Source: Anolis carolinensis
Taxonomy: Eukaryota
DNA: 64,000 nt
Assembly: GCF_035594765.1 (NCBI RefSeq)
Contig: NC_085844.1
Coordinates: 163,200,107 to 163,264,106, forward strand
Reading direction: 5' to 3'
Below are positions 3-61,601 of this stretch, one piece after another. The notes beneath the pieces are model-generated. The model was not told the DNA's origin and did not search any database. It saw nothing but the letters and a program-made list of their open reading frames with translations. The translations under genes were made by a program, and so were the position numbers. The number at the start of each line of letters is the position of its first letter. Positions within the stretch are counted from its first letter, which is position 1.

Positions 3-2054
3 GAAGTCCACACTGATCATCGTAATCTAGAACATCTAAGAACTGCCCGCAAACTAAATCAGAGGCAGCAACGTTGGGCTTTATTCTTTGAACGTTTCAA
101 CTTCCAGATTCATTATGTGACCCCAGCTCAAACCAAGCAAGCAGACGCCCTGTCACGTAAACCGGAATACGCTGCAGGACGCAAGGAGACCTTTGAATCC
201 CAACTGCTACAACCTGAGAACTTTGCCACGCTCACAGTGGGGAACACCAAATCCAGTCCCATTGGTTCAACTTCCCCTACTCCAGGACCCATCTGTGCTC
301 AAGAAATCAGGGCTAGTCAGCAGGCAGATGCCTGGGCGCAGGACCAACTTCGCCAAGGTCTGCATTTTCCCTTTTCGCTTAAAGATGGGCTGCTCTGCTA
401 TAGAAATCATGTTTATATCCCACCCGGACCGGGCAGGGAAAAAGCGCTTCGTCTGTGTCATGACTGCAAACCAGCAGGACACTTCGGACTATTTAAAACC
501 ATGCATTTGATCCTAAGAGATTTTTGGTGGCCCAAGATCCGCAAGGATGTGGAAAAATATGTCAACACCTGCCCAGTATGCCAGCGCTCCAAGATACGAA
601 GGGAGAAGCCCTCAGGGCTTTTGCACCCCCTTCCTACCCCATCTCGCCCATGGGAAATAATTTCCGCGGATTTCATCACTGACCTACCACCTTCCTGTGG
701 ATTCACCACGATCTTAGTGGTGGTGGACCTATTCACCAAGTTAGCCCATTTCATTCCCTGCGAAGGCCTCCCCACGGCCAAAGAAACTGCGGATCTATTT
801 CTTCAGCATGTTTTCAGACTACATGGATTGCCCAAGAGTTTAGTCACAGACCGTGGATCTCAATTCACCTCTCGTTTTTGGAAGGCACTACAAAAACTAT
901 TGGGCATAGACTCTCGCTTATCTTCAGCTCATCATCCCCAAACAGATGGGCAAACGGAACGCACCAATGCCACTTTGGAGCAGTATCTTCGCTGTTATGT
1001 AAACTACCAACAGGACAATTGGGCTTCTCTGTTACCACTGTCTGAGTTTGCCTACAATAATGGAGTTCAAGCTTCTACAAAAGAAACGCCGTTCTTTGCA
1101 AACTACGGTTTCCATCCACGTTTCTTTCCCCCTGTCATTGAAACTTCAGAAGTTCCCGCAGCAGAGGATTGGCTGCAGGAACTCACAGCGGTGCAACAAC
1201 TTTTGCTCCAGCAACTGGACCAAGCCAAGGAGGACTATAAACGCCACGCTGACAAACACCGCCAGCCGGGCCCCGAAATCAAGGTAGGAGATCGGGTTTT
1301 CCTGTCCACTCGCTTTCTGCCCTCCCACCGCCCATGCCGGAAGTTAGATGCCCGCTTCATTGGCCCCTATCCAGTGGTGGCGCAATTAAACCCCGTGACT
1401 TTCAAACTCCAACTTCCGCGTTCAATGCGCATTCACCCAGTGTTTCACCGTTCCCTGCTCCTTCCGGCGGATGGTGTGCGTCCTGATACAGACCAACCGG
1501 CCCCCCCTCCTGTTTTGATGAATGGGGAGGAGGAGTTCGAGGTTGAGGACATTTTGGATTCTCGCTTTCATCGCCGCCGCCTACAATATCTCATTGACTG
1601 GGTGGGTTTTGGGCCTGAGGAACGCTCTTGGGAAGACGCCTCCACAGTTCATGCTCCTGATCTAACCCGTCGCTTCCATCTGACCTATCCCACCAAACCG
1701 CGACCTCGCGCCTCGGGGAGAGGACCCCAGTTTGGGAGGGGCCCTGAGGAGGGGGATAGTGTGATGAACCATGGGCCTTGTAGTCCTGCTCAGGACATTG
1801 TAATCCCTGATGAAGATGAAAACTTGGGTTTTTTACCTTCCCAGTCTGAACTGGATTCCTCTCAGCCAGATCTTTCCCAGGCAGATCTGGAAACCTTGCA
1901 CCTGCAAGAAAGTTGTGCCCCAGAAGTATGTCAAACAACCCCAGAGCCTACTTCTCCCGTGTTCTTGCGCCGGGAGTTTTGTAAACAACAGAGAAGTTTG
2001 GATTCAGCTTCGCGCAGGAGTGCGAGGATAGCAGCTAAGAATGTTGCCAATTAA
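3..2054 (+). CDS. pol: Pol polyprotein C-terminal part: RNase H end, integrase (HHCC, DDE, GPY/F), chromodomain and an LTR-encoded tail
   Basis: Frame is open from base 3 (EVHTDHRNL...QRWALFF...ADALSR). Zinc finger H..H..CPVC; catalytic ISADFI / VTDRGS / GQTERTN; RFIGPY; chromodomain FEVEDILDSR..QYLIDWVGFGPEERSWE at about 1536-1679; stop TAA at 2052-2054 lies inside the LTR. Confidence 0.95.
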   Translation, partial: EVHTDHRNLEHLRTARKLNQRQQRWALFFERFNFQIHYVTPAQTKQADALSRKPEYAAGRKETFESQLLQPENFATLTVGNTKSSPIGSTSPTPGPICAQEIRASQQADAWAQDQLRQGLHFPFSLKDGLLCYRNHVYIPPGPGREKALRLCHDCKPAGHFGLFKTMHLILRDFWWPKIRKDVEKYVNTCPVCQRSKIRREKPSGLLHPLPTPSRPWEIISADFITDLPPSCGFTTILVVVDLFTKLAHFIPCEGLPTAKETADLFLQHVFRLHGLPKSLVTDRGSQFTSRFWKALQKLLGIDSRLSSAHHPQTDGQTERTNATLEQYLRCYVNYQQDNWASLLPLSEFAYNNGVQASTKETPFFANYGFHPRFFPPVIETSEVPAAEDWLQELTAVQQLLLQQLDQAKEDYKRHADKHRQPGPEIKVGDRVFLSTRFLPSHRPCRKLDARFIGPYPVVAQLNPVTFKLQLPRSMRIHPVFHRSLLLPADGVRPDTDQPAPPPVLMNGEEEFEVEDILDSRFHRRRLQYLIDWVGFGPEERSWEDASTVHAPDLTRRFHLTYPTKPRPRASGRGPQFGRGPEEGDSVMNHGPCSPAQDIVIPDEDENLGFLPSQSELDSSQPDLSQADLETLHLQESCAPEVCQTTPEPTSPVFLRREFCKQQRSLDSASRRSARIAAKNVAN
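1746..1759 (+). other. Polypurine tract (plus-strand primer site)
   Basis: GAGGAGGGGGATAG directly before the LTR-initial TG at 1760. Confidence 0.85.
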
Positions 2055-2731
2055 CATTGGTTCTCGTGAGAATCTTTAAGGAGTTTAACATCTGGTCTCA
2101 GAGTTTAGCTTTCGTTTCTGATTCCCAGAGAATCGCTTTGGTGAGAAAGTTGGACTCTATATAGGTGTTTTGCCCGCGTAGCAACTTCGCGGAGTCAATT
2201 CGTCAGCCTACGGAGCGAGTTGTGTCTGGACAGCGCGCTCCGATTCAAGCCTCGCTTCAGCTCAAGCCTTGCCTTGCTATCCAGCCTTCGCCTTGCTTTC
2301 CAGCCTTGTTTACCTACGGACTTTGCCTTGTTTCCCAGGACTAATCCTTGCCTTGTTTCACGGATTTTACCAAGTTATTCCACGGACCTTGTTCCTGTTC
2401 TCAGTTACCTTGTTCCACGTTCAAGCCTTGTTTCAAGTATCAAGTTATTTCCTAGCCACGCTCAAGTTTTATGGACTAAGGACCTTGTCATCTCCCCTCA
2501 CTTTGCTTGGCAAAGTGAGTGTTTCGGTTATTGGATTACAACTTTGGACCTTAATATTTCTTATTGGACATTGCTTTTTTGGACTAATTCTGACCTTTCC
2601 TGAAGGGTCTAATTCTGGACTATTTTCTATACTTGTTTTTATTAACTTTATATATTCCTTCAATAAAGATATTAGTTAGATTCTGGCCTCTGTGTATGGT
2701 TATTGGTGCCTCTGCTGCCTGGGTCGTGACA
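1760..2731 (+). repeat. 3' LTR (972 bp)
   Basis: Starts TGTGATGA and ends TCGTGACA. TATA-like TATATA at 2158-2163, AATAAA at 2662-2667. Both ends match the solo LTR at 15860-16715, which fixes the boundaries. Confidence 0.93.
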
Positions 2732-9069: not shown

Positions 9070-9316
9070 GAAGGTAAAGATTTGCCCCTGACATCAGACA
9101 CCTCCAAGATCATGTGGCCGGCATGACTGCATGGAGCTTCCCGCCGAAGCAGTATCTATTGATCTACTCATATTTGCATGTTTTAGAATTGCTAGGTTGG
9201 CAGAAGCTGGGGCTAACAACGGGAGCTCGCCCCACTCCCCAGATTTGAACCACCAACCTTTTGGTCAGCAGGTTTAGCAGCTCAGTGGTTTAACCTGCTG
9301 CACCATCGGAGGCTCC
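9070..9316 (-). mobile_element. Sauria-type SINE with internal deletions
   Basis: On the minus strand it begins GGAGCC with tRNA-like A/B boxes, has the central GCAAATATGAGTAGATCAATAG motif and an (ACCTTT)-like tail (AAGGTAAAG on the plus strand). Confidence 0.8.
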
Positions 9317-13197: not shown

Positions 13198-14994
13198 TAA
13201 GAAGTACTTGATTATAAAGCTTTGTATGAGTTGGGAGATAGTTTCTGAAGTAACGAAATCTTCTGAACCAATTAACTTATGTTTTGAGGTCATTTGCAGC
13301 AGTTGTTTCTTGAATACTCAAACCATGGGTTAACCTGAGAGGAGGCCAGGATCTAGGTGGTAACACTTATTCTTTATTTCTGTCCTTTAGGAGTGTTGCT
13401 TGACATCTTTGAGATCCTCTAAATGTCATTCAGAGTGATTATTAATTTCACAGTCTTTTAAATTGTTTTCAGTATCTCGGGTCTTGTATTTTAAAACTAA
13501 GTATATTATTATTTGACTTTGTTTGGTTATATTAGCATTATAGGGCACTATGTTCTCCAAATAATGCAGGGAGGTATTGTGTGGTTCAACAACACTTTTA
13601 TTCTGCCATGATTATGAGGCTTACGATATTCACTGAAACATGGCCAAGAATTTCTCTGTTCAGGTGATTGCAAAAGAATAGGTTATGCCTATGTGCAAAA
13701 TTACTGGATCATATTGAAGTAAAACATGTCAGGAATCTTAATAAATAGTTTGGGTATCTAAAAAAAGTCATTCTGGTTACAACGTTAGTTTAAAACTATG
13801 AGCTTTTCAGGCCTAGATCTGCTGTTGATTTTTCTGCTTGTGCCTAAGTTTGCTTTTAAAACCACATGTTAATGCTTTGGTTTGAAGTTCTTAGAGATAA
13901 GAGAACAAATGCCTTGTTCTTTCACAGAGGTGTTTTTAAATGTGTTTGAAAAAGCTTTAGATCAAATGCATAGCAGAAGTGCTTGGTATTAAAATTGCTC
14001 TATGAGACACATCATCTATTCACCTTGAGATGCTGTTCATTAATTCTACATAAAAGCAAGCTGACTTGGGCAAATATAGGGGCATAGTTTTATGTGAGTG
14101 GGTGGAAGAAGTCACCACACAGCGCAACCAGTGATGTTGCAGTATCTAAAAGGGCCAGACGTAAATTGCTAATATATTTGTAGCTCATTGGTTAACAGAG
14201 TTGGAGTTGGAGTAAAGTTGTCTGTTATGTAATTGTGAAAGGGCTGCTCTTCTCATAATAATTATTTTGAAGCAGCTTGTTGATGAGATTCTCAAATCAC
14301 AAATAGTTTCCTTATTACACTTTTTTCAAGTACAGGTTAAATAATTTCAAATAACTGCTGTTCAAAGTGACCGACACATGTGGCATTTGTGTTGGGTAAT
14401 TTTAAGGACTTCATTCTAAGCACATTTCCCCTAAGGAGCATCATGTAAATCCACCTTTTGAATGAAGAATTACTTCAATGACAAAAATAGAATTTATTTC
14501 ATCTTGTTTACATTTGGAGCATGTTAAACTGCCTTAAACTGAATAAAAGCATTGATCTGTCGCCCCACATTGGCTGTTTCCGTTACCATACCAGACTTTT
14601 CTCCCACTACAATATCAGCATTCTAAAAATGCCTTTCAGTCAGAATTGTTCTCCTTCCTTTTGTACCTCTGGAACCATTCAAGGATTACAGCATTCATTT
14701 GTACTAAAATCTTATCACACATAACATTTGGAGACTGCCCAAACAGTATCACCCAGTGCCTACTCCAATATATTATTTCTGCCTCCCTTTCCTTCACTAA
14801 TGCTTTCTTCTGCCTCCTTCTCCCACACACATAAGATTCCCCACAGAAATATAAATGAAAACAGTCTTATAATTAGAAAGGTCCTTCCCCTGGGGCTGGG
14901 GAGGGGTAGACCAACTAGTACAAATTGATGTCCGGTGAAATCAGCAGCTGTTGATTGATCTGTCTGATTTATCCAATGCTTTTTTTTAAAAAAT

Positions 14995-14996
<2 letters not shown>

Positions 14997-15028
<32 letters not shown>

Positions 15029-15260
15029 TATTATTGTTGTTGTTGTTGTTATTTATACCCCACTTTTTCTCTCCACAAAGGAGATTTAAACCAGTTTACA
15101 TTAAAAGCATTTCAATACATTTTAAAATCCAAAAATATACAAACAAAATAGAATTAAACATCAATGGTATTAATTAAAAATTAACAGTTAAAATCCTTAG
15201 AACTGATTGAAAATGTATTCAAAGCTAGAACTACAGCAGCCCCTTGACTTGATCTTAAAA
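14997..15260 (-). mobile_element. L2-type LINE 3' end with expanded (TTA)n/(TTG)n microsatellite tail
   Basis: Microsatellite at 14997-15050 followed by TTTATACCCCAC..., resembling the antisense L2 ends at 31146 and 59441. Confidence 0.55.
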
Positions 15261-15859: not shown

Positions 15860-16715
15860 TGTGATGACTCATGGGCCTTGTAGTCCTGTTCCTAGTACTA
15901 TTGTGGCAGACGAAGAGGAAAACATGGGATTTTTGCCGGTTCAGCCAGAGCCGGAGCCTCTCCACCTGGAGGATGTTTGCCCTCAAGAATTCAGCCAAAC
16001 AAGCCTTGGGCAGAACTCCCCCCCGTTTTCCCGGAGGGACAATTATACTAGAGATAGAGGAGTCAGAGAAGCTAATCGCCGAAGCCTGAGAATCGCTGCC
16101 AAACAACTGGATGATTAGGTCTGCTTCCCTTGGGAAATTCTAAGGAGTCATGCATCTGGACAGAGTTGGGTTTCGCTTCTCGTTCTCTAGGGAAAGAGCT
16201 CTGTTGGCGGGAAAACGAGACCCAATATAGGTGTTTGTTGCAAGGGAAACTTTGCAATTGATCAGCTTGAGGAGAGAGATCGTGTGTGGACTTCGTAATC
16301 CCTGTTCCCTGCTTCCCGGATCAAGTTTCAAGTCTTGCCTCGTCTCACGGTTTGCCACGGACTATTGTTTCATGCTTCAAGTTTGCCTCGTTTTTAAGTC
16401 TTGGGTCAAGTCAAGAATCAAGTTTATTTCCAGCCTGGTTGTCAAGCTTCATTGGACTATAAAGACCTTGTTATTTCCCCACACTATTGCTTGGCAAAGT
16501 GTGTGTTTCGGTCAAGTGGATTATAACTTTGAACTCTAATATCTTATATTGGACAATACATTTCTGGACTATATTTGACCTTATCTTAAAGGTCTACTTC
16601 TGAACTTTATTCTTCACTTGTTTTTATTGATTTTATATATTTCCTTAATAAAGATATTAGATAGATTCTGGCCTCTGTGCAAGGTTATTGGTGCTCTGCA
16701 GCCTGGGTCCTGACA
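15860..16715 (+). mobile_element. Solo LTR (856 bp) of a sister subfamily of the chromovirus at 1-2731
   Basis: TGTGATGA...CCTGACA ends, near-identical termini and 3' region to the LTR at 1760-2731, AATAAA at 16647-16652, flanks GGGTG / GGGGG (5-bp TSD with one mismatch), no internal domain adjacent. Confidence 0.92.
15861..16118 (+). CDS. LTR-encoded 85-aa frame homologous to the integrase C-terminal tail at 1761-2054; expression from a solo LTR is unproven
   Basis: HGPCSP, DEEENMGFLP, LHL, SPPFSRR and RRSLRIAAK align with HGPCSP, DEDENLGFLP, LHL, SPVFLRR and RRSARIAAK. The length difference is an in-frame 36 nt and the stop sits at the same position. Confidence 0.6.
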   Translation: MMTHGPCSPVPSTIVADEEENMGFLPVQPEPEPLHLEDVCPQEFSQTSLGQNSPPFSRRDNYTRDRGVREANRRSLRIAAKQLDD

Positions 16716-53865: not shown

Positions 53866-54426
53866 CAGGGGTCCCCAAACTAAGGCCCGGGGGCCGGATG
53901 CGGCCCATCGAAGCCATTTATCTGGCCCCCATAGCACAAGGGCAGAAGGGGTTTGGGCTAAATGACCCAAGGGATCTCTTCTTCTCTTAAAACCCTTATT
54001 GTTGTTGTTGTTGTTGTTGTTGTTATTATTTGAAACACAACAAGATGAGTCCACAGCAGACACTCTGCTGGCTGTTGTATTGGATTACACATCGGACACT
54101 TCCTAAGTGTCTAGGACTGTGTGATGTATCGGCGAATAATGTGTGCAGATCCCAGTAAGGTGGCCTTCTGCAGCTGGCAGATGGTAATTTTGTTAGCGCC
54201 GATTTTGTTAAGTGCAGGCCAAGGTCTTTAGCTGATTACCACTGGGACCACCTTGACTGGCTTGTGCCAGAGTCTTTGTAATTCGATCTTTGAATCCTCA
54301 TATCATGTCAGCTTTTCCAGTTGTTTCTCCTCAATCCTTCTGTCACCTGGGATTGCAACATCGACAATCCATACTTTGTTTTTTAACACGATTGTGAGGT
54401 CAGGAGTATTGTGTTCCAAAACCCTA

Positions 54427-54484
<58 letters not shown>

Positions 54485-54729
54485 ATTGAGGTGGGGTGGC
54501 CATCTGTCAGGGATGCTTTGCTTGTGCTTTTGGTGCACAGAGGCAGAAGGGAGTTGGACTCAATGGCCCAAAGGGTCTCTGCCAACCCTCTTTTTTATTG
54601 TTGTTGTTGTTGTTGTTGTTGTTGTTATTATTATTATTATTATTGCTCAGTGGCCAACTATAGTCCAGCCCTCCAACGGTCCAAAGGATCGTGACATGGC
54701 CCCCTGTTTAAAAAGTTTGGGGACCCCTG
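53866..54729. mobile_element. Composite non-autonomous hAT element
   Basis: TIRs CAGGGGTCCCCAAACT / AGTTTGGGGACCCCTG and a perfect 8-bp TSD GACTATAC (53858-53865, 54730-54737). Interior has microsatellites, two CR1-3'UTR-like pieces and an R4/Dong fragment. Confidence 0.92.
54031..54424 (-). mobile_element. R4/Dong-clade LINE 3' fragment (restriction-like endonuclease domain) lying between (TTA)n/(TTG)n repeats
   Basis: Minus strand translates HNTPDLTIV...IVDVAIPGD...EK..*Y...VVPVVI...LQKATLLGSAHIIRRYI, the RLE PD..D and terminal LQK motifs. Confidence 0.8.
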
Positions 54730-61391: not shown

Positions 61392-61601
61392 AAGAGAAAA
61401 ACAAAAATGAGCCAAAACGAATGTAAGTATAATTATTTTCTCTGAAAGGTCCGAAAATTGTTGTTTTTTCCTGACACAAGAGAAAAACAAAAATGAGCCA
61501 AAACGAATGAAACTATAATTATTTTCTCCCAAAGGTCTGATTTTTTTTGTTTTTTTCTGACACAAGAGAAAAACAAAAATGAGCCAAAACGAATGAAACT
61601 A
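61392..61601. repeat. 86-bp tandem repeat, about 2.4 copies
   Basis: AAGAGAAAAACAAAAATGAGCCAAAACGAATG recurs at 61392, 61478 and 61564. Confidence 0.9.

What the first reader, a model, noticed from the sequence alone, without database searches (positions are those of the whole stretch)
1760..2054. Integrase reads into its own LTR and ends in an HMGN-like nucleosome-binding motif (RRSARIAAK)
Seen: pol does not stop after the chromodomain. It runs through the PPT (PEEGDSV) and 97 codons into U3, giving an acidic linker, SPVFLRR and finally RRSARIAAK (2013-2039), four residues before the stop. Known: the HMGN nucleosome-binding core is RRSARLSA(K), so 7 of 9 residues are identical, and it docks on the H2A-H2B acidic patch. 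Foamy virus Gag and KSHV LANA use arginine anchors on the same patch, and plant CRM chromoviruses carry an integrase targeting motif that extends into the 3' LTR. Inference: this lizard chromovirus may have a bipartite chromatin-targeting system (methyl-lysine chromodomain plus acidic-patch tether) with the second module encoded in dual-use LTR DNA. I do not know of this being described for vertebrate Gypsy elements, but I cannot search the literature.
Basis: partly seen in the sequence, partly recalled or inferred. Interest (0 to 1): 0.9.

Follow-up and report, generated by a model that had tools for sequence, protein, structure and literature searches.

The report
LTR-encoded integrase tail with HMGN-like motif
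A lizard (Anolis) Gypsy-type retrotransposon encodes the last ~90 residues of its integrase inside its own LTR; the tail is under protein-level selection and ends in a motif almost identical to tested nucleosome-binding peptides, so it may tether integration to nucleosomes, though no binding has been tested.

Summary
In this Anolis carolinensis window the pol frame (RNase H end, integrase, SH3, HP1-like chromodomain) stays open through the polypurine tract (ends 1759). It then runs 97 codons into the 3' LTR (1760-2731) and stops at 2052-2054 after RRSARIAAK-NVAN.

A young full-length copy with a target-site duplication fixes the LTR start exactly.

The tail is selected as protein:
- dN/dS is 0.12-0.24 between three diverged copies.
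- The other two frames give pN/pS near 1 and contain stops.
- The only indel is 36 nt, in frame.
- The nine motif codons differ mostly synonymously.
- About 27 predicted Anolis proteins from seven or more subfamilies keep RRS[AL]RIAA[KR].

Two gecko relatives also read 74 and 112 codons into U3, ending in an arginine-rich ...ARRSLSP[ED][FY]. A more distant relative stops exactly at the LTR border.

The motif matches validated acidic-patch binders: yeast Dot5 RRSARIAT (7 of 8), HMGN RRSARLSA and Dsup RRSSRLTS, with all three essential arginines. No sequence search links the tail to HMGN proteins. Binding is untested, and the geckos lack the anchor arginine.

I read it as a new variant of known kinds: the plant CRM LTR-encoded targeting tail, and the HMGN-like motif. 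The main rival is a nuclear import signal.

The scan's first readers noted the same family on other DNA of this genome.

The parts
3..1759 (+). 3' part of pol of chromovirus copy A: RNase H end, integrase zinc domain (432-596), catalytic core (642-938), SH3/GPY-F domain (1287-1463), chromodomain (1536-1679) and linker
   Evidence: Open frame; Pfam hits; chromodomain best matches HP1 beta/alpha with cage F/W/F; dN/dS against L001 is 0.056 for the integrase part and 0.17 for chromodomain plus linker
1735..1759 (+). Polypurine tract, translated as part of pol (...GRGPEEGDS)
   Evidence: Purine run directly 5' of the LTR start; the same junction is seen in L001, L002 and L003
1760..2731 (+). 3' LTR of copy A (972 bp, TG...CA)
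   Evidence: Alignment with solo LTR B; L001 LTR pair and target-site duplication; repeat depth falls about 150-fold after 2731
1761..2054 (+). U3-encoded integrase tail: 97 codons plus stop, about 69% of the inferred U3
   Evidence: Same frame as pol; dN/dS 0.12-0.24; shifted-frame control; one in-frame 36-nt indel only; conserved in about 27 predicted proteins
1809..1832 (+). Conserved acidic block DEDENLGF (DE[DE]EN[LM]GF in the family)
   Evidence: Nearly invariant in alignment A4; codons differ synonymously between copies A, B and L001 in the sequences printed
2013..2039 (+). HMGN-like motif RRSARIAAK, four residues before the stop
   Evidence: eight synonymous against one or two non-synonymous differences in these nine codons between copy A and copies B or L001; matches Dot5, HMGN and Dsup motifs
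2158..2165 (+). TATA-like box TATATAGG, 104 nt after the tail's stop; inferred end of U3 about 30 nt downstream
   Evidence: Read from sequence; conserved in copy B and L001; a similar box is present in the gecko LTR. Its role as promoter is inferred
2662..2667 (+). AATAAA polyadenylation signal near the LTR 3' end
   Evidence: Read from sequence; conserved in copy B and L001. Its function is inferred
15860..16715 (+). Diverged solo LTR B of a sister subfamily (856 bp), flanked by GGGTG/GGGGG
   Evidence: no pol sequence lies upstream
15861..16118 (+). Fossil of the tail frame in solo LTR B: 85 codons plus stop, ending RRSLRIAAKQLDD (motif at 16077-16103)

Best explanation
Shown:
- The window holds the 3' end of a vertebrate chromovirus (Ty3/Gypsy) of Anolis carolinensis.
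- Its integrase does not end after the chromodomain. It continues through the polypurine tract and 85-97 codons into U3 of the 3' LTR.
- This extension has evolved as protein across at least seven subfamilies. It keeps short conserved blocks: HGPCSP, DEEENLGF, LHLQE-C-PE, SPxFSR[RH] and a C-terminal RRS[AL]RIAA[KR].
- Gecko relatives share the U3 read-through and an arginine-rich C-terminus.

Inferred:
- The tail is probably a flexible linker carrying short linear motifs; this is not shown, because the structure model was uninformative.
- Its last motif acts as an HMGN-like arginine anchor on the H2A-H2B acidic patch of the nucleosome.
- Together with the HP1-like chromodomain, which would read methylated H3K9, this would give the intasome two contacts on one nucleosome and so tether or bias integration.
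- Because the module lies in U3, the same DNA is also the terminal integrase-recognition end and the upstream promoter region of the LTR, and it is copied to both LTRs at each cycle.
For: Read-through and LTR borders.

Protein-level selection:
- dN/dS is 0.21, 0.24 and 0.12, with binomial p from 2e-4 to 3e-8.
- Third codon positions carry the excess of differences.
- pN/pS is 0.18-0.45 in the integrase frame, against 0.9-1.5 with 3-9 stops in the other two frames.
- The tail has one 36-nt in-frame indel, against 14-20 mostly non-3n indels in the rest of the LTR.
- Across many genomic copies no indel at 10% share or more lies inside 1760-2054. Of the five best-supported common variants listed there (49 further variants across the whole 1300-2800 stretch were not listed), four are synonymous third positions.
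- Motif codons change synonymously (CGC AGG AGT GCG AGG ATA... against CGC CGA AGC CTG AGA ATC...).

Conservation: about 27 predicted Anolis proteins keep the tail. Intact or young gecko elements read 74 and 112 codons into U3, with a conserved C-terminus (pS 0.80 against pN 0.34).

Motif function in other proteins: Dot5 RRSARIAT binds the acidic patch and needs R6, R7 and R10. Dsup RRSSRLTS and HMGN2 RRSAR are resolved on the acidic patch.

Chromodomain: HP1-like, cage F/W/F.

Precedent for an LTR-encoded integrase targeting module: CRM group A.
Against: - No binding data exist for this peptide.
- The similarity to HMGN is confined to 8-9 residues. Pfam HMG14_17 and a PDB phmmer search on the tail found nothing. 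A tail profile against 1.8 billion representative proteins found only six hits: four carrying the same tail, one sharing just its first 25 residues, and one weak repeat protein. The sixth, P0046, I did not inspect. No HMGN protein was seen.
- The gecko tails keep RRS-L but replace the anchor arginine (RRSLSP), so the conserved ancestral function may be something other than acidic-patch docking.
- The motif lacks the lysine-rich DNA-contacting part that follows it in HMGN proteins.
- A few Anolis copies carry RQS, CRS or RRN variants.
- The AlphaFold2 model was poor (pLDDT 54) and drew the C-terminus as a helix, whereas HMGN and Dsup bind extended.
Confidence: 0.45

Rival explanations
1. The basic C-terminus is mainly a nuclear import signal for the integrase or pre-integration complex, either bipartite (R[RH] ... 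13 residues ... RRSxR) or arginine-rich. The resemblance to HMGN would then be incidental.
For: Two basic clusters, FxR[RHK] and RRS[AL]R, are conserved about 13 residues apart in all subfamilies. The gecko tails end in long arginine-rich stretches without the exact HMGN pattern. From established knowledge, Ty1 and Ty3 integrases carry C-terminal import signals, and the Ty1 bipartite signal region is also its targeting domain (PMC7459421, listed).
Against: - The upstream cluster is often a single arginine (RH), and the spacer is longer than the classical 10-12 residues.
- Conservation covers S, I, A and A as well as the basic residues, with synonymous codon turnover. A plain basic signal does not need that.
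- Import and acidic-patch binding are not mutually exclusive.
Confidence: 0.25
2. The tail carries docking motifs for another partner. Candidates are a phosphorylation-controlled RRS[LA] site (basophilic or Aurora-type kinase), a different host chromatin factor bound by the acidic DEEENLGF block or the C-terminus, or nucleic-acid binding by the arginine-rich end.
For: The only part of the end motif shared by Anolis and gecko tails is RRS followed by L. The acidic block is as conserved as the end motif. Serine phosphorylation inside RRSARLSA is known to switch off HMGN binding. Other integrases use C-terminal peptides for host tethers, for example MLV integrase with BET proteins (PMC4027182, listed).
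Against: No specific partner can be named from sequence. The acidic block lacks the first phenylalanine of the LEDGF-binding consensus, which I quote from recall. The Anolis motif matches an experimentally validated acidic-patch binder at 7 of 8 positions.
Confidence: 0.2
3. The extension is a functionless read-through. Its conservation would reflect DNA-level constraint on U3 (integrase recognition end, enhancers) or simply the youth of the copies.
For: The first ~25 nt of the LTR (VMTHGPCSP) must also serve as the integrase recognition end, so some conservation there can be DNA-level. Many copies are young: the L001 LTRs differ at 2 sites.
Against: - Differences concentrate at third positions in one frame only.
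- dN/dS is 0.12-0.24.
- Indels are in frame.
- Subfamilies at 60-83% nucleotide identity in the tail all keep the frame and the stop position.
- Geckos conserve a read-through too.
Confidence: 0.03

Closest known systems
Plant centromeric chromoviruses, CRM group A (CR motif)
   Same: The integrase coding region extends past the PPT into the 3' LTR, and the LTR-encoded part is the putative targeting domain (PMC3059260).
   Different: In CRM the CR motif replaces the chromodomain; here the tail is added after a canonical HP1-like chromodomain. The hosts are plants, not vertebrates. The tail-profile search returned no plant or CRM protein, although it did not target CRM. The partner of the CR motif is unknown.
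HMGN-like nucleosome-binding motif (HMGN1-5 RRSARLSA; tardigrade Dsup RRSSRLTS; yeast Dot5 RRSARIAT)
   Same: RRSARIAA shares 7 of 8 residues with Dot5, 6 of 8 with HMGN and 4 of 8 with Dsup. That includes the three arginines needed for acidic-patch binding and the serine. Like Dot5's, it lies a few residues from a protein terminus.
   Different: It lies at the C-terminal end of a retrotransposon integrase, without the lysine-rich DNA-binding stretch of HMGN. There is no homology outside the motif, and binding is not tested.
Viral acidic-patch tethers (KSHV LANA N-terminus; foamy virus Gag chromatin-binding sequence)
   Same: A short arginine-anchor peptide from a mobile or viral element would dock it on the H2A-H2B acidic patch. 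LANA is cited as such; the foamy Gag case is from my own knowledge.
   Different: Those peptides have different sequences and sit on an episome-maintenance protein or on Gag, not on integrase.
C-terminal targeting peptides of other integrases (MLV integrase tail with the BET ET domain; Ty1 integrase C-terminal targeting domain and import signal; Ty5 integrase with Sir4)
   Same: A short motif at the far C-terminus of integrase determines where integration goes (PMC4027182 and PMC7459421, listed; Ty5 is from my own knowledge).
   Different: Those tethers bind specific host proteins and are encoded inside pol, upstream of the PPT. Here the proposed partner is the nucleosome surface itself and the coding DNA is U3.
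Type I chromodomain chromoviruses (for example MAGGY, Tf1/sushi group)
   Same: Same domain order up to the chromodomain, with all three cage positions aromatic. A more distant relative, L004, ends pol exactly at the PPT/LTR junction, as is usual.
   Different: The squamate clade adds 74-112 codons of U3-encoded tail after the chromodomain.

Membership tests
Chromovirus (Ty3/Gypsy LTR retrotransposon with integrase C-terminal chromodomain) | Integrase with H2C2 zinc domain, DDE core and GPY/F-SH3 domain, followed by a chromodomain | tested here: met
   Pfam PF17921, PF00665, PF24626 and PF00385, all above their cut-offs
Chromovirus (Ty3/Gypsy LTR retrotransposon with integrase C-terminal chromodomain) | LTRs with TG...CA ends, a PPT next to the 3' LTR, and a target-site duplication | tested here: met
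   Window LTR 1760-2731; L001 LTR pair with 5-bp duplication GCATG
Type I (HP1-like) chromodomain | Three aromatic cage residues aligned with HP1 Y/W/F | tested here: met
   phmmer alignment to CBX1 and CBX5: F, W and F at the cage positions, E = 3e-9. Methyl-lysine binding itself was not tested
HMGN-like nucleosome-binding motif | Core RRS-x-R-[LI] with three arginines at positions 1, 2 and 5 | tested here: met
   RRSARIAA in copy A, RRSLRIAA in copy B, RRSARIAA in L001. R at positions 1 and 2 and S at 3 are kept in at least 90% of 24 aligned tails; R at 5 and I at 6 are invariant.
HMGN-like nucleosome-binding motif | Binds the H2A-H2B acidic patch, with binding lost on arginine or acidic-patch mutation | not testable with these tools
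AlphaFold3 is reported to fail on HMGN2-nucleosome anyway
HMGN protein family (Pfam HMG14_17) | Homology over the whole nucleosome-binding domain | tested here: not met
   No Pfam family at E <= 10 on the tail; no PDB chain at E <= 10; the inspected hits of the tail profile included no HMGN protein
LTR-encoded integrase targeting domain (as in CRM group A) | The pol frame crosses the PPT and ends inside the 3' LTR | tested here: met
   Anolis copy A and L001, Heteronotia L002, Gekko L003
LTR-encoded integrase targeting domain (as in CRM group A) | Sequence similarity to the CR motif | not tested
   No CRM sequence was fetched. The tail-profile search returned no plant protein
LEDGF/TND-binding motif (IBM/TIM) | Acidic residues followed by F-x-G-F (consensus from recall) | tested here: not met
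   The block is DE[DE]EN[LM]GF: the first F is N in all 24 aligned tails

The most novel reading that the evidence does not exclude
In squamate Gypsy elements, the 5' part of U3 is a general, fast-evolving cassette that encodes the integrase's chromatin-tethering peptide. Different families would have filled it with different host-mimicking short motifs. This family would carry an HMGN/Dot5-type acidic-patch anchor added to an H3K9me-reading chromodomain. Chromodomain-less families would carry FxGF-type LEDGF/TND-binding motifs, which other first readers of this genome noted but nobody has tested. Target choice would then be encoded in, and evolve together with, the LTR promoter region.
Probability: 0.3. 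Interest if true: 0.85.

Novelty: new variant of a known kind. Interest (0 to 1): 0.66.

Why it matters
If the motif does bind the acidic patch, this would be, as far as I could find, the first retroelement integrase with a built-in HMGN-type nucleosome anchor.

It would also be the first animal example of the plant CRM arrangement, in which the targeting peptide of integrase is written in the LTR.

It would give a natural two-handed nucleosome reader (methyl-lysine cage plus arginine anchor) on an enzyme whose substrate is nucleosomal DNA.

It would add a transposon member to the 'untapped realm' of HMGN-like motifs proposed after the Dsup and HMGN2 structures (PMC12487698).

Independently of the mechanism, the coding use of about 69% of U3 matters for annotation. 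Solo LTRs of this family contain a selected-looking open frame, and gene models in the Anolis annotation already pick up pieces of it (P0004, P0005, P0042, P0043).

Tried and rejected
- Pfam on the tail alone gave nothing at E <= 10.
- phmmer of the last 39 residues against PDB chains gave nothing.
- The tail profile against 1.84 billion representative proteins gave six hits. Four carry the same tail, one shares only its first 25 residues, and one is a weak repeat protein. The sixth (P0046) was not inspected. There was no HMGN protein and no clear hit from another taxon.
- The gecko tail against the 5.8-billion protein set gave no hit.
- The AlphaFold2 model of chromodomain plus tail, built from a 24-row alignment, was poor (pLDDT 54). 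Even the chromodomain was not folded, so it is uninformative.
- I looked for more DNA copies through exact-protein look-ups. Most Anolis models are UniRef-only and not on record. Xenopus P0054 and Anolis P0042 gave no DNA because the gene range was too long.
- I asked whether window copy A is followed by internal element sequence, because it shares GTTTG after the LTR with L001. BLAST found no homology, so this is coincidence.
- Runs guessed to be RNA hold the stretch, but only as contigs and with the RNA label a guess. I draw no conclusion on expression.
- A nucleosome or H2A-H2B complex prediction was not run, because no eukaryotic histone sequence was available to the tool within its rules.
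- The LEDGF-type reading of the acidic block is rejected as a membership claim, because the first phenylalanine is missing.
The consensus lines are automatic tool output and were not used.
Full report
**What is in the window**

The window is from Anolis carolinensis: the closest database proteins are UniRef and NCBI models of that species.

It opens inside the pol gene of a Ty3/Gypsy element. The frame starting at base 3 is open to the stop at 2052-2054. In order, it carries the end of RNase H, the integrase zinc domain, the catalytic core, the Tf2-type SH3 domain and a chromodomain.

The chromodomain is most similar to the HP1 beta and alpha chromodomains (E = 3e-9). It has F, W and F at the three cage positions, so it is a type I chromodomain.

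**Where the LTR starts**

The purine run GGGAGGGGCCCTGAGGAGGGGGATAG ends at 1759, and TGTGATGA follows at 1760. Three independent results fix this as the LTR border.

- A second, diverged LTR in the window (15860-16715) aligns with copy A exactly from TGTGATGA to ...GACA and not beyond.
- A full-length Anolis copy fetched from the public assembly (L001) has two LTRs differing at 2 sites. They begin with the same TGTGATGA, end with CTGACA, and are flanked by a 5-bp duplication GCATG.
- When contigs of four public runs are laid on 1300-2800, the very high repeat depth falls about 150-fold after 2731.

The 3' LTR is therefore 1760-2731. The pol frame runs 97 codons into it. A TATA-like box lies at 2158-2165 and AATAAA at 2662-2667. 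The coding part therefore takes about 295 of roughly 430 nt of the inferred U3.

**Is the extension a real coding sequence?**

I compared three diverged copies: A, the solo LTR B, and L001. Their nucleotide identity in the tail is 60-83%, which is no higher than in the non-coding rest of the LTR (68-84%).

- Nei-Gojobori dN/dS is 0.21 (A-B), 0.24 (A-L001) and 0.12 (B-L001). The shortage of non-synonymous changes is significant at p = 2e-4 to 3e-8.
- Differences pile up at third positions (47 against 29 and 25; 45 against 22 and 22; 23 against 12 and 9).
- As a control I shifted the same alignments by one and two bases. pN/pS becomes 0.9-1.5 and 3-9 stops appear, against 0.18-0.45 and no stop in the integrase frame.
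- The only indel in the tail is 36 nt, in frame. The rest of the LTR has 14-20 indels per pair, mostly not multiples of three.
- For comparison, A against L001 gives omega 0.056 for integrase and 0.17 for chromodomain plus linker. The tail therefore evolves about ten times faster in amino acids than the enzyme, but clearly under constraint.
- Across the many genomic copies sampled in public runs, no indel reaching a 10% share lies inside 1760-2054. Several such indels lie in the non-coding LTR.
- The five best-supported common substitutions listed in the tail are four synonymous third-position changes (1805, 1847, 2030, 2045) and one non-synonymous site (1891), where the window copy is the minority. 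That table omitted 49 further variants across the whole stretch.

**How widespread it is**

Word-based and exhaustive protein searches found about 40 predicted Anolis proteins of this clade. Of these, 27 distinct sequences contain chromodomain, PPT-encoded GDSV and the complete tail.

They fall into at least seven subfamilies. These differ by in-frame indels of 2, 5, 7 and 12 codons and by 25-50% of tail residues.

All keep the same blocks: HGPCSP, DEEENLGF, LHLQE-C-PE, SPxFSR[RH] and a C-terminal RRS[AL]RIAA[KR] followed by four residues and the stop. R at motif position 5 and I at position 6 are invariant in 24 aligned tails. R at positions 1 and 2 and S at position 3 are kept in at least 90%.

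**Beyond Anolis**

- Heteronotia binoei (gecko, locus L002): an element with 99.7% identical LTRs and uninterrupted gag and pol. Its pol reads 74 codons past GGGGGGGGGGATAG|TGTCATGG into U3.
- Gekko kuhli (L003): an element with 100% identical LTRs. It reads 112 codons into U3.
- Both gecko tails have an acidic, serine- and proline-rich first part and an arginine-rich end, closing with ARRSLSPEF or ARRSLSPDY.
- Over the last 31 aligned codons, pS is 0.80 and pN 0.34.
- A more distant relative on a metagenome contig (L004, about 50% identity) stops with TGA exactly at the PPT/LTR junction. Fern and other relatives end near the PPT.

On this sampling the read-through looks like a shared trait of a squamate clade, not of chromoviruses in general. 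Only a handful of relatives were examined.

**The end motif**

In the three DNA copies the nine codons read as follows:

| Copy | Codons |
|---|---|
| A | CGC AGG AGT GCG AGG ATA GCA GCT AAG |
| B | CGC CGA AGC CTG AGA ATC GCT GCC AAA |
| L001 | CGC AGA AGC GCC AGA ATT GCT GCC AGA |

Between copy A and the other two, seven of the nine codons carry synonymous differences (eight synonymous changes in all) while the peptide stays RRS[AL]RIAA[KR]. This rules out a DNA-level explanation for the conservation.

Given the tail's own composition, RRS.R[IL] arises in 2.2e-4 of shuffles and the 8-residue class in 2e-5.

- The HMGN core is RRSARLSA.
- Cryo-EM shows HMGN2 R23 and R26, and Dsup R363 and R367 (motif RRSSRLTS), on the acidic patch. 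The fifth-position arginine acts as the classical anchor (PMC12487698).
- Yeast Dot5 has RRSARIAT near its N-terminus.
- Dot5 prefers nucleosomes over DNA at physiological salt. It loses binding when R6, R7 or R10 are changed, and it binds acidic-patch-mutant nucleosomes poorly (bioRxiv 10.64898/2026.01.14.699602, also NAR 2026).

The Anolis RRSARIAA is identical to Dot5 at 7 of 8 positions. The two departures from HMGN (I for L, A for S) are therefore present in a working motif.

**What speaks against the acidic-patch reading**

- Nothing beyond the short motif links the tail to HMGN proteins.
- The gecko tails share only RRS-L with Anolis and lack the anchor arginine at that place, although arginines abound nearby.
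- The lysine-rich DNA-contacting part of the HMGN domain is absent.
- The conserved pair of basic clusters could be a bipartite import signal. That would fit what is known for the Ty1 and Ty3 integrases.
- RRS followed by a hydrophobic residue also looks like a basophilic kinase site.

I could not model the complex. No histone sequence was available to the complex tool under its rules. The HMGN2 paper also reports that AlphaFold3 gets this very interaction wrong. My AlphaFold2 model of chromodomain plus tail was too poor to use.

**Verdict**

The observation and the claims of coding, selection and dual use are solid (about 0.95).

The most likely mechanism is an arginine anchor on the acidic patch working beside the chromodomain. 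I put it at about 0.45. The rivals are an import signal at about 0.25, another docking or regulatory motif at about 0.2, and no function at about 0.03.

The arrangement is a new variant of two known things. One is the LTR-encoded integrase targeting domain of plant CRM elements (PMC3059260). The other is the HMGN-like motif. My searches of the held literature found no report of either in an animal retrotransposon, but that library is incomplete.

**Link to other notes of this scan**

First readers reported the same family on other pieces of this genome (s1-519609, s1-519664). They also reported chromodomain-less Gypsy families whose U3-encoded tails carry FxGF-type motifs (s1-517342, s1-519623, s1-528309, s1-528310, s1-519610).

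I tested only the solo-LTR note. The others are leads for the broader idea that U3 serves as a cassette for tethering peptides.

Broken copies are only described: L001 has in-frame stops in pol at 9215 and 9575.

Noticed in passing
window 1720-1800: The UniRef Anolis ADAMTS17 model (P0005) contains a 26-residue insert, GPQFGRGPEEGDSVMNHGPCSPAQDI, identical to copy A including its private residues. The window therefore probably lies in an ADAMTS17 intron. The gene model exonises the PPT/LTR junction, with a donor-like ATT|GTAATC at 1799/1800. This could be an annotation artefact or a real exonisation.
   Followed up: partly
window 1809-1832 (and 15909-15932): The acidic block DE[DE]EN[LM]GF is as conserved as the end motif, with synonymous codon differences. 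It resembles the LEDGF/TND-binding pattern ExExFxGF, which I quote from recall, but has N in place of the first F. Its partner is unknown.
   Followed up: partly
P0004 (Anolis gene model); L001 5905-6200: This gene model starts in the tail frame of a 5' LTR (MTHGPCSP...DLSQ) and is spliced to gag. It shows the tail DNA upstream of gag, as expected for U3. Whether any real transcript uses it is unknown. Another first-reader note (s1-519611) proposes a Gag-tail spliced mRNA, which I could not test.
   Followed up: no
L001 7800-11518: This is a very young Anolis copy (LTRs differ at 2 sites, target-site duplication GCATG), yet its pol frame is interrupted by in-frame stops at 9215 and 9575.
   Followed up: partly
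L004 4600-5529: A metagenome contig holds a compact chromovirus with an LTR of only about 95 nt. Its pol ends with TGA exactly at the PPT/LTR junction. The contig continues after the LTR into a second gag, so it is a tandem or wrap-around assembly.
   Followed up: partly
P0049, P0050 (Anolis): In a sister Anolis chromovirus family (85-87% identity over the aligned SH3-chromodomain stretch), the predicted proteins end near the PPT, with no tail in the models. Whether the frame really stops there could not be checked, because no DNA is on record.
   Followed up: partly
P0054 (Xenopus laevis): In this Xenopus relative the predicted protein also continues past a PPT-like ...FEGGQC junction into non-homologous sequence. 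That hints at read-through in amphibian elements, but the DNA was not retrievable.
   Followed up: no
window 14964-15065, 53968-54644, 61392-61563: (ATT)n and (GTT)n microsatellites, and an 86-bp tandem duplication. All are unrelated to the finding.
   Followed up: no
window 1528-1545, frame +1: RRSSRL occurs by chance in an unused frame inside the chromodomain coding region. This shows that the 6-residue pattern alone is not rare in arginine-codon-rich DNA.
   Followed up: yes
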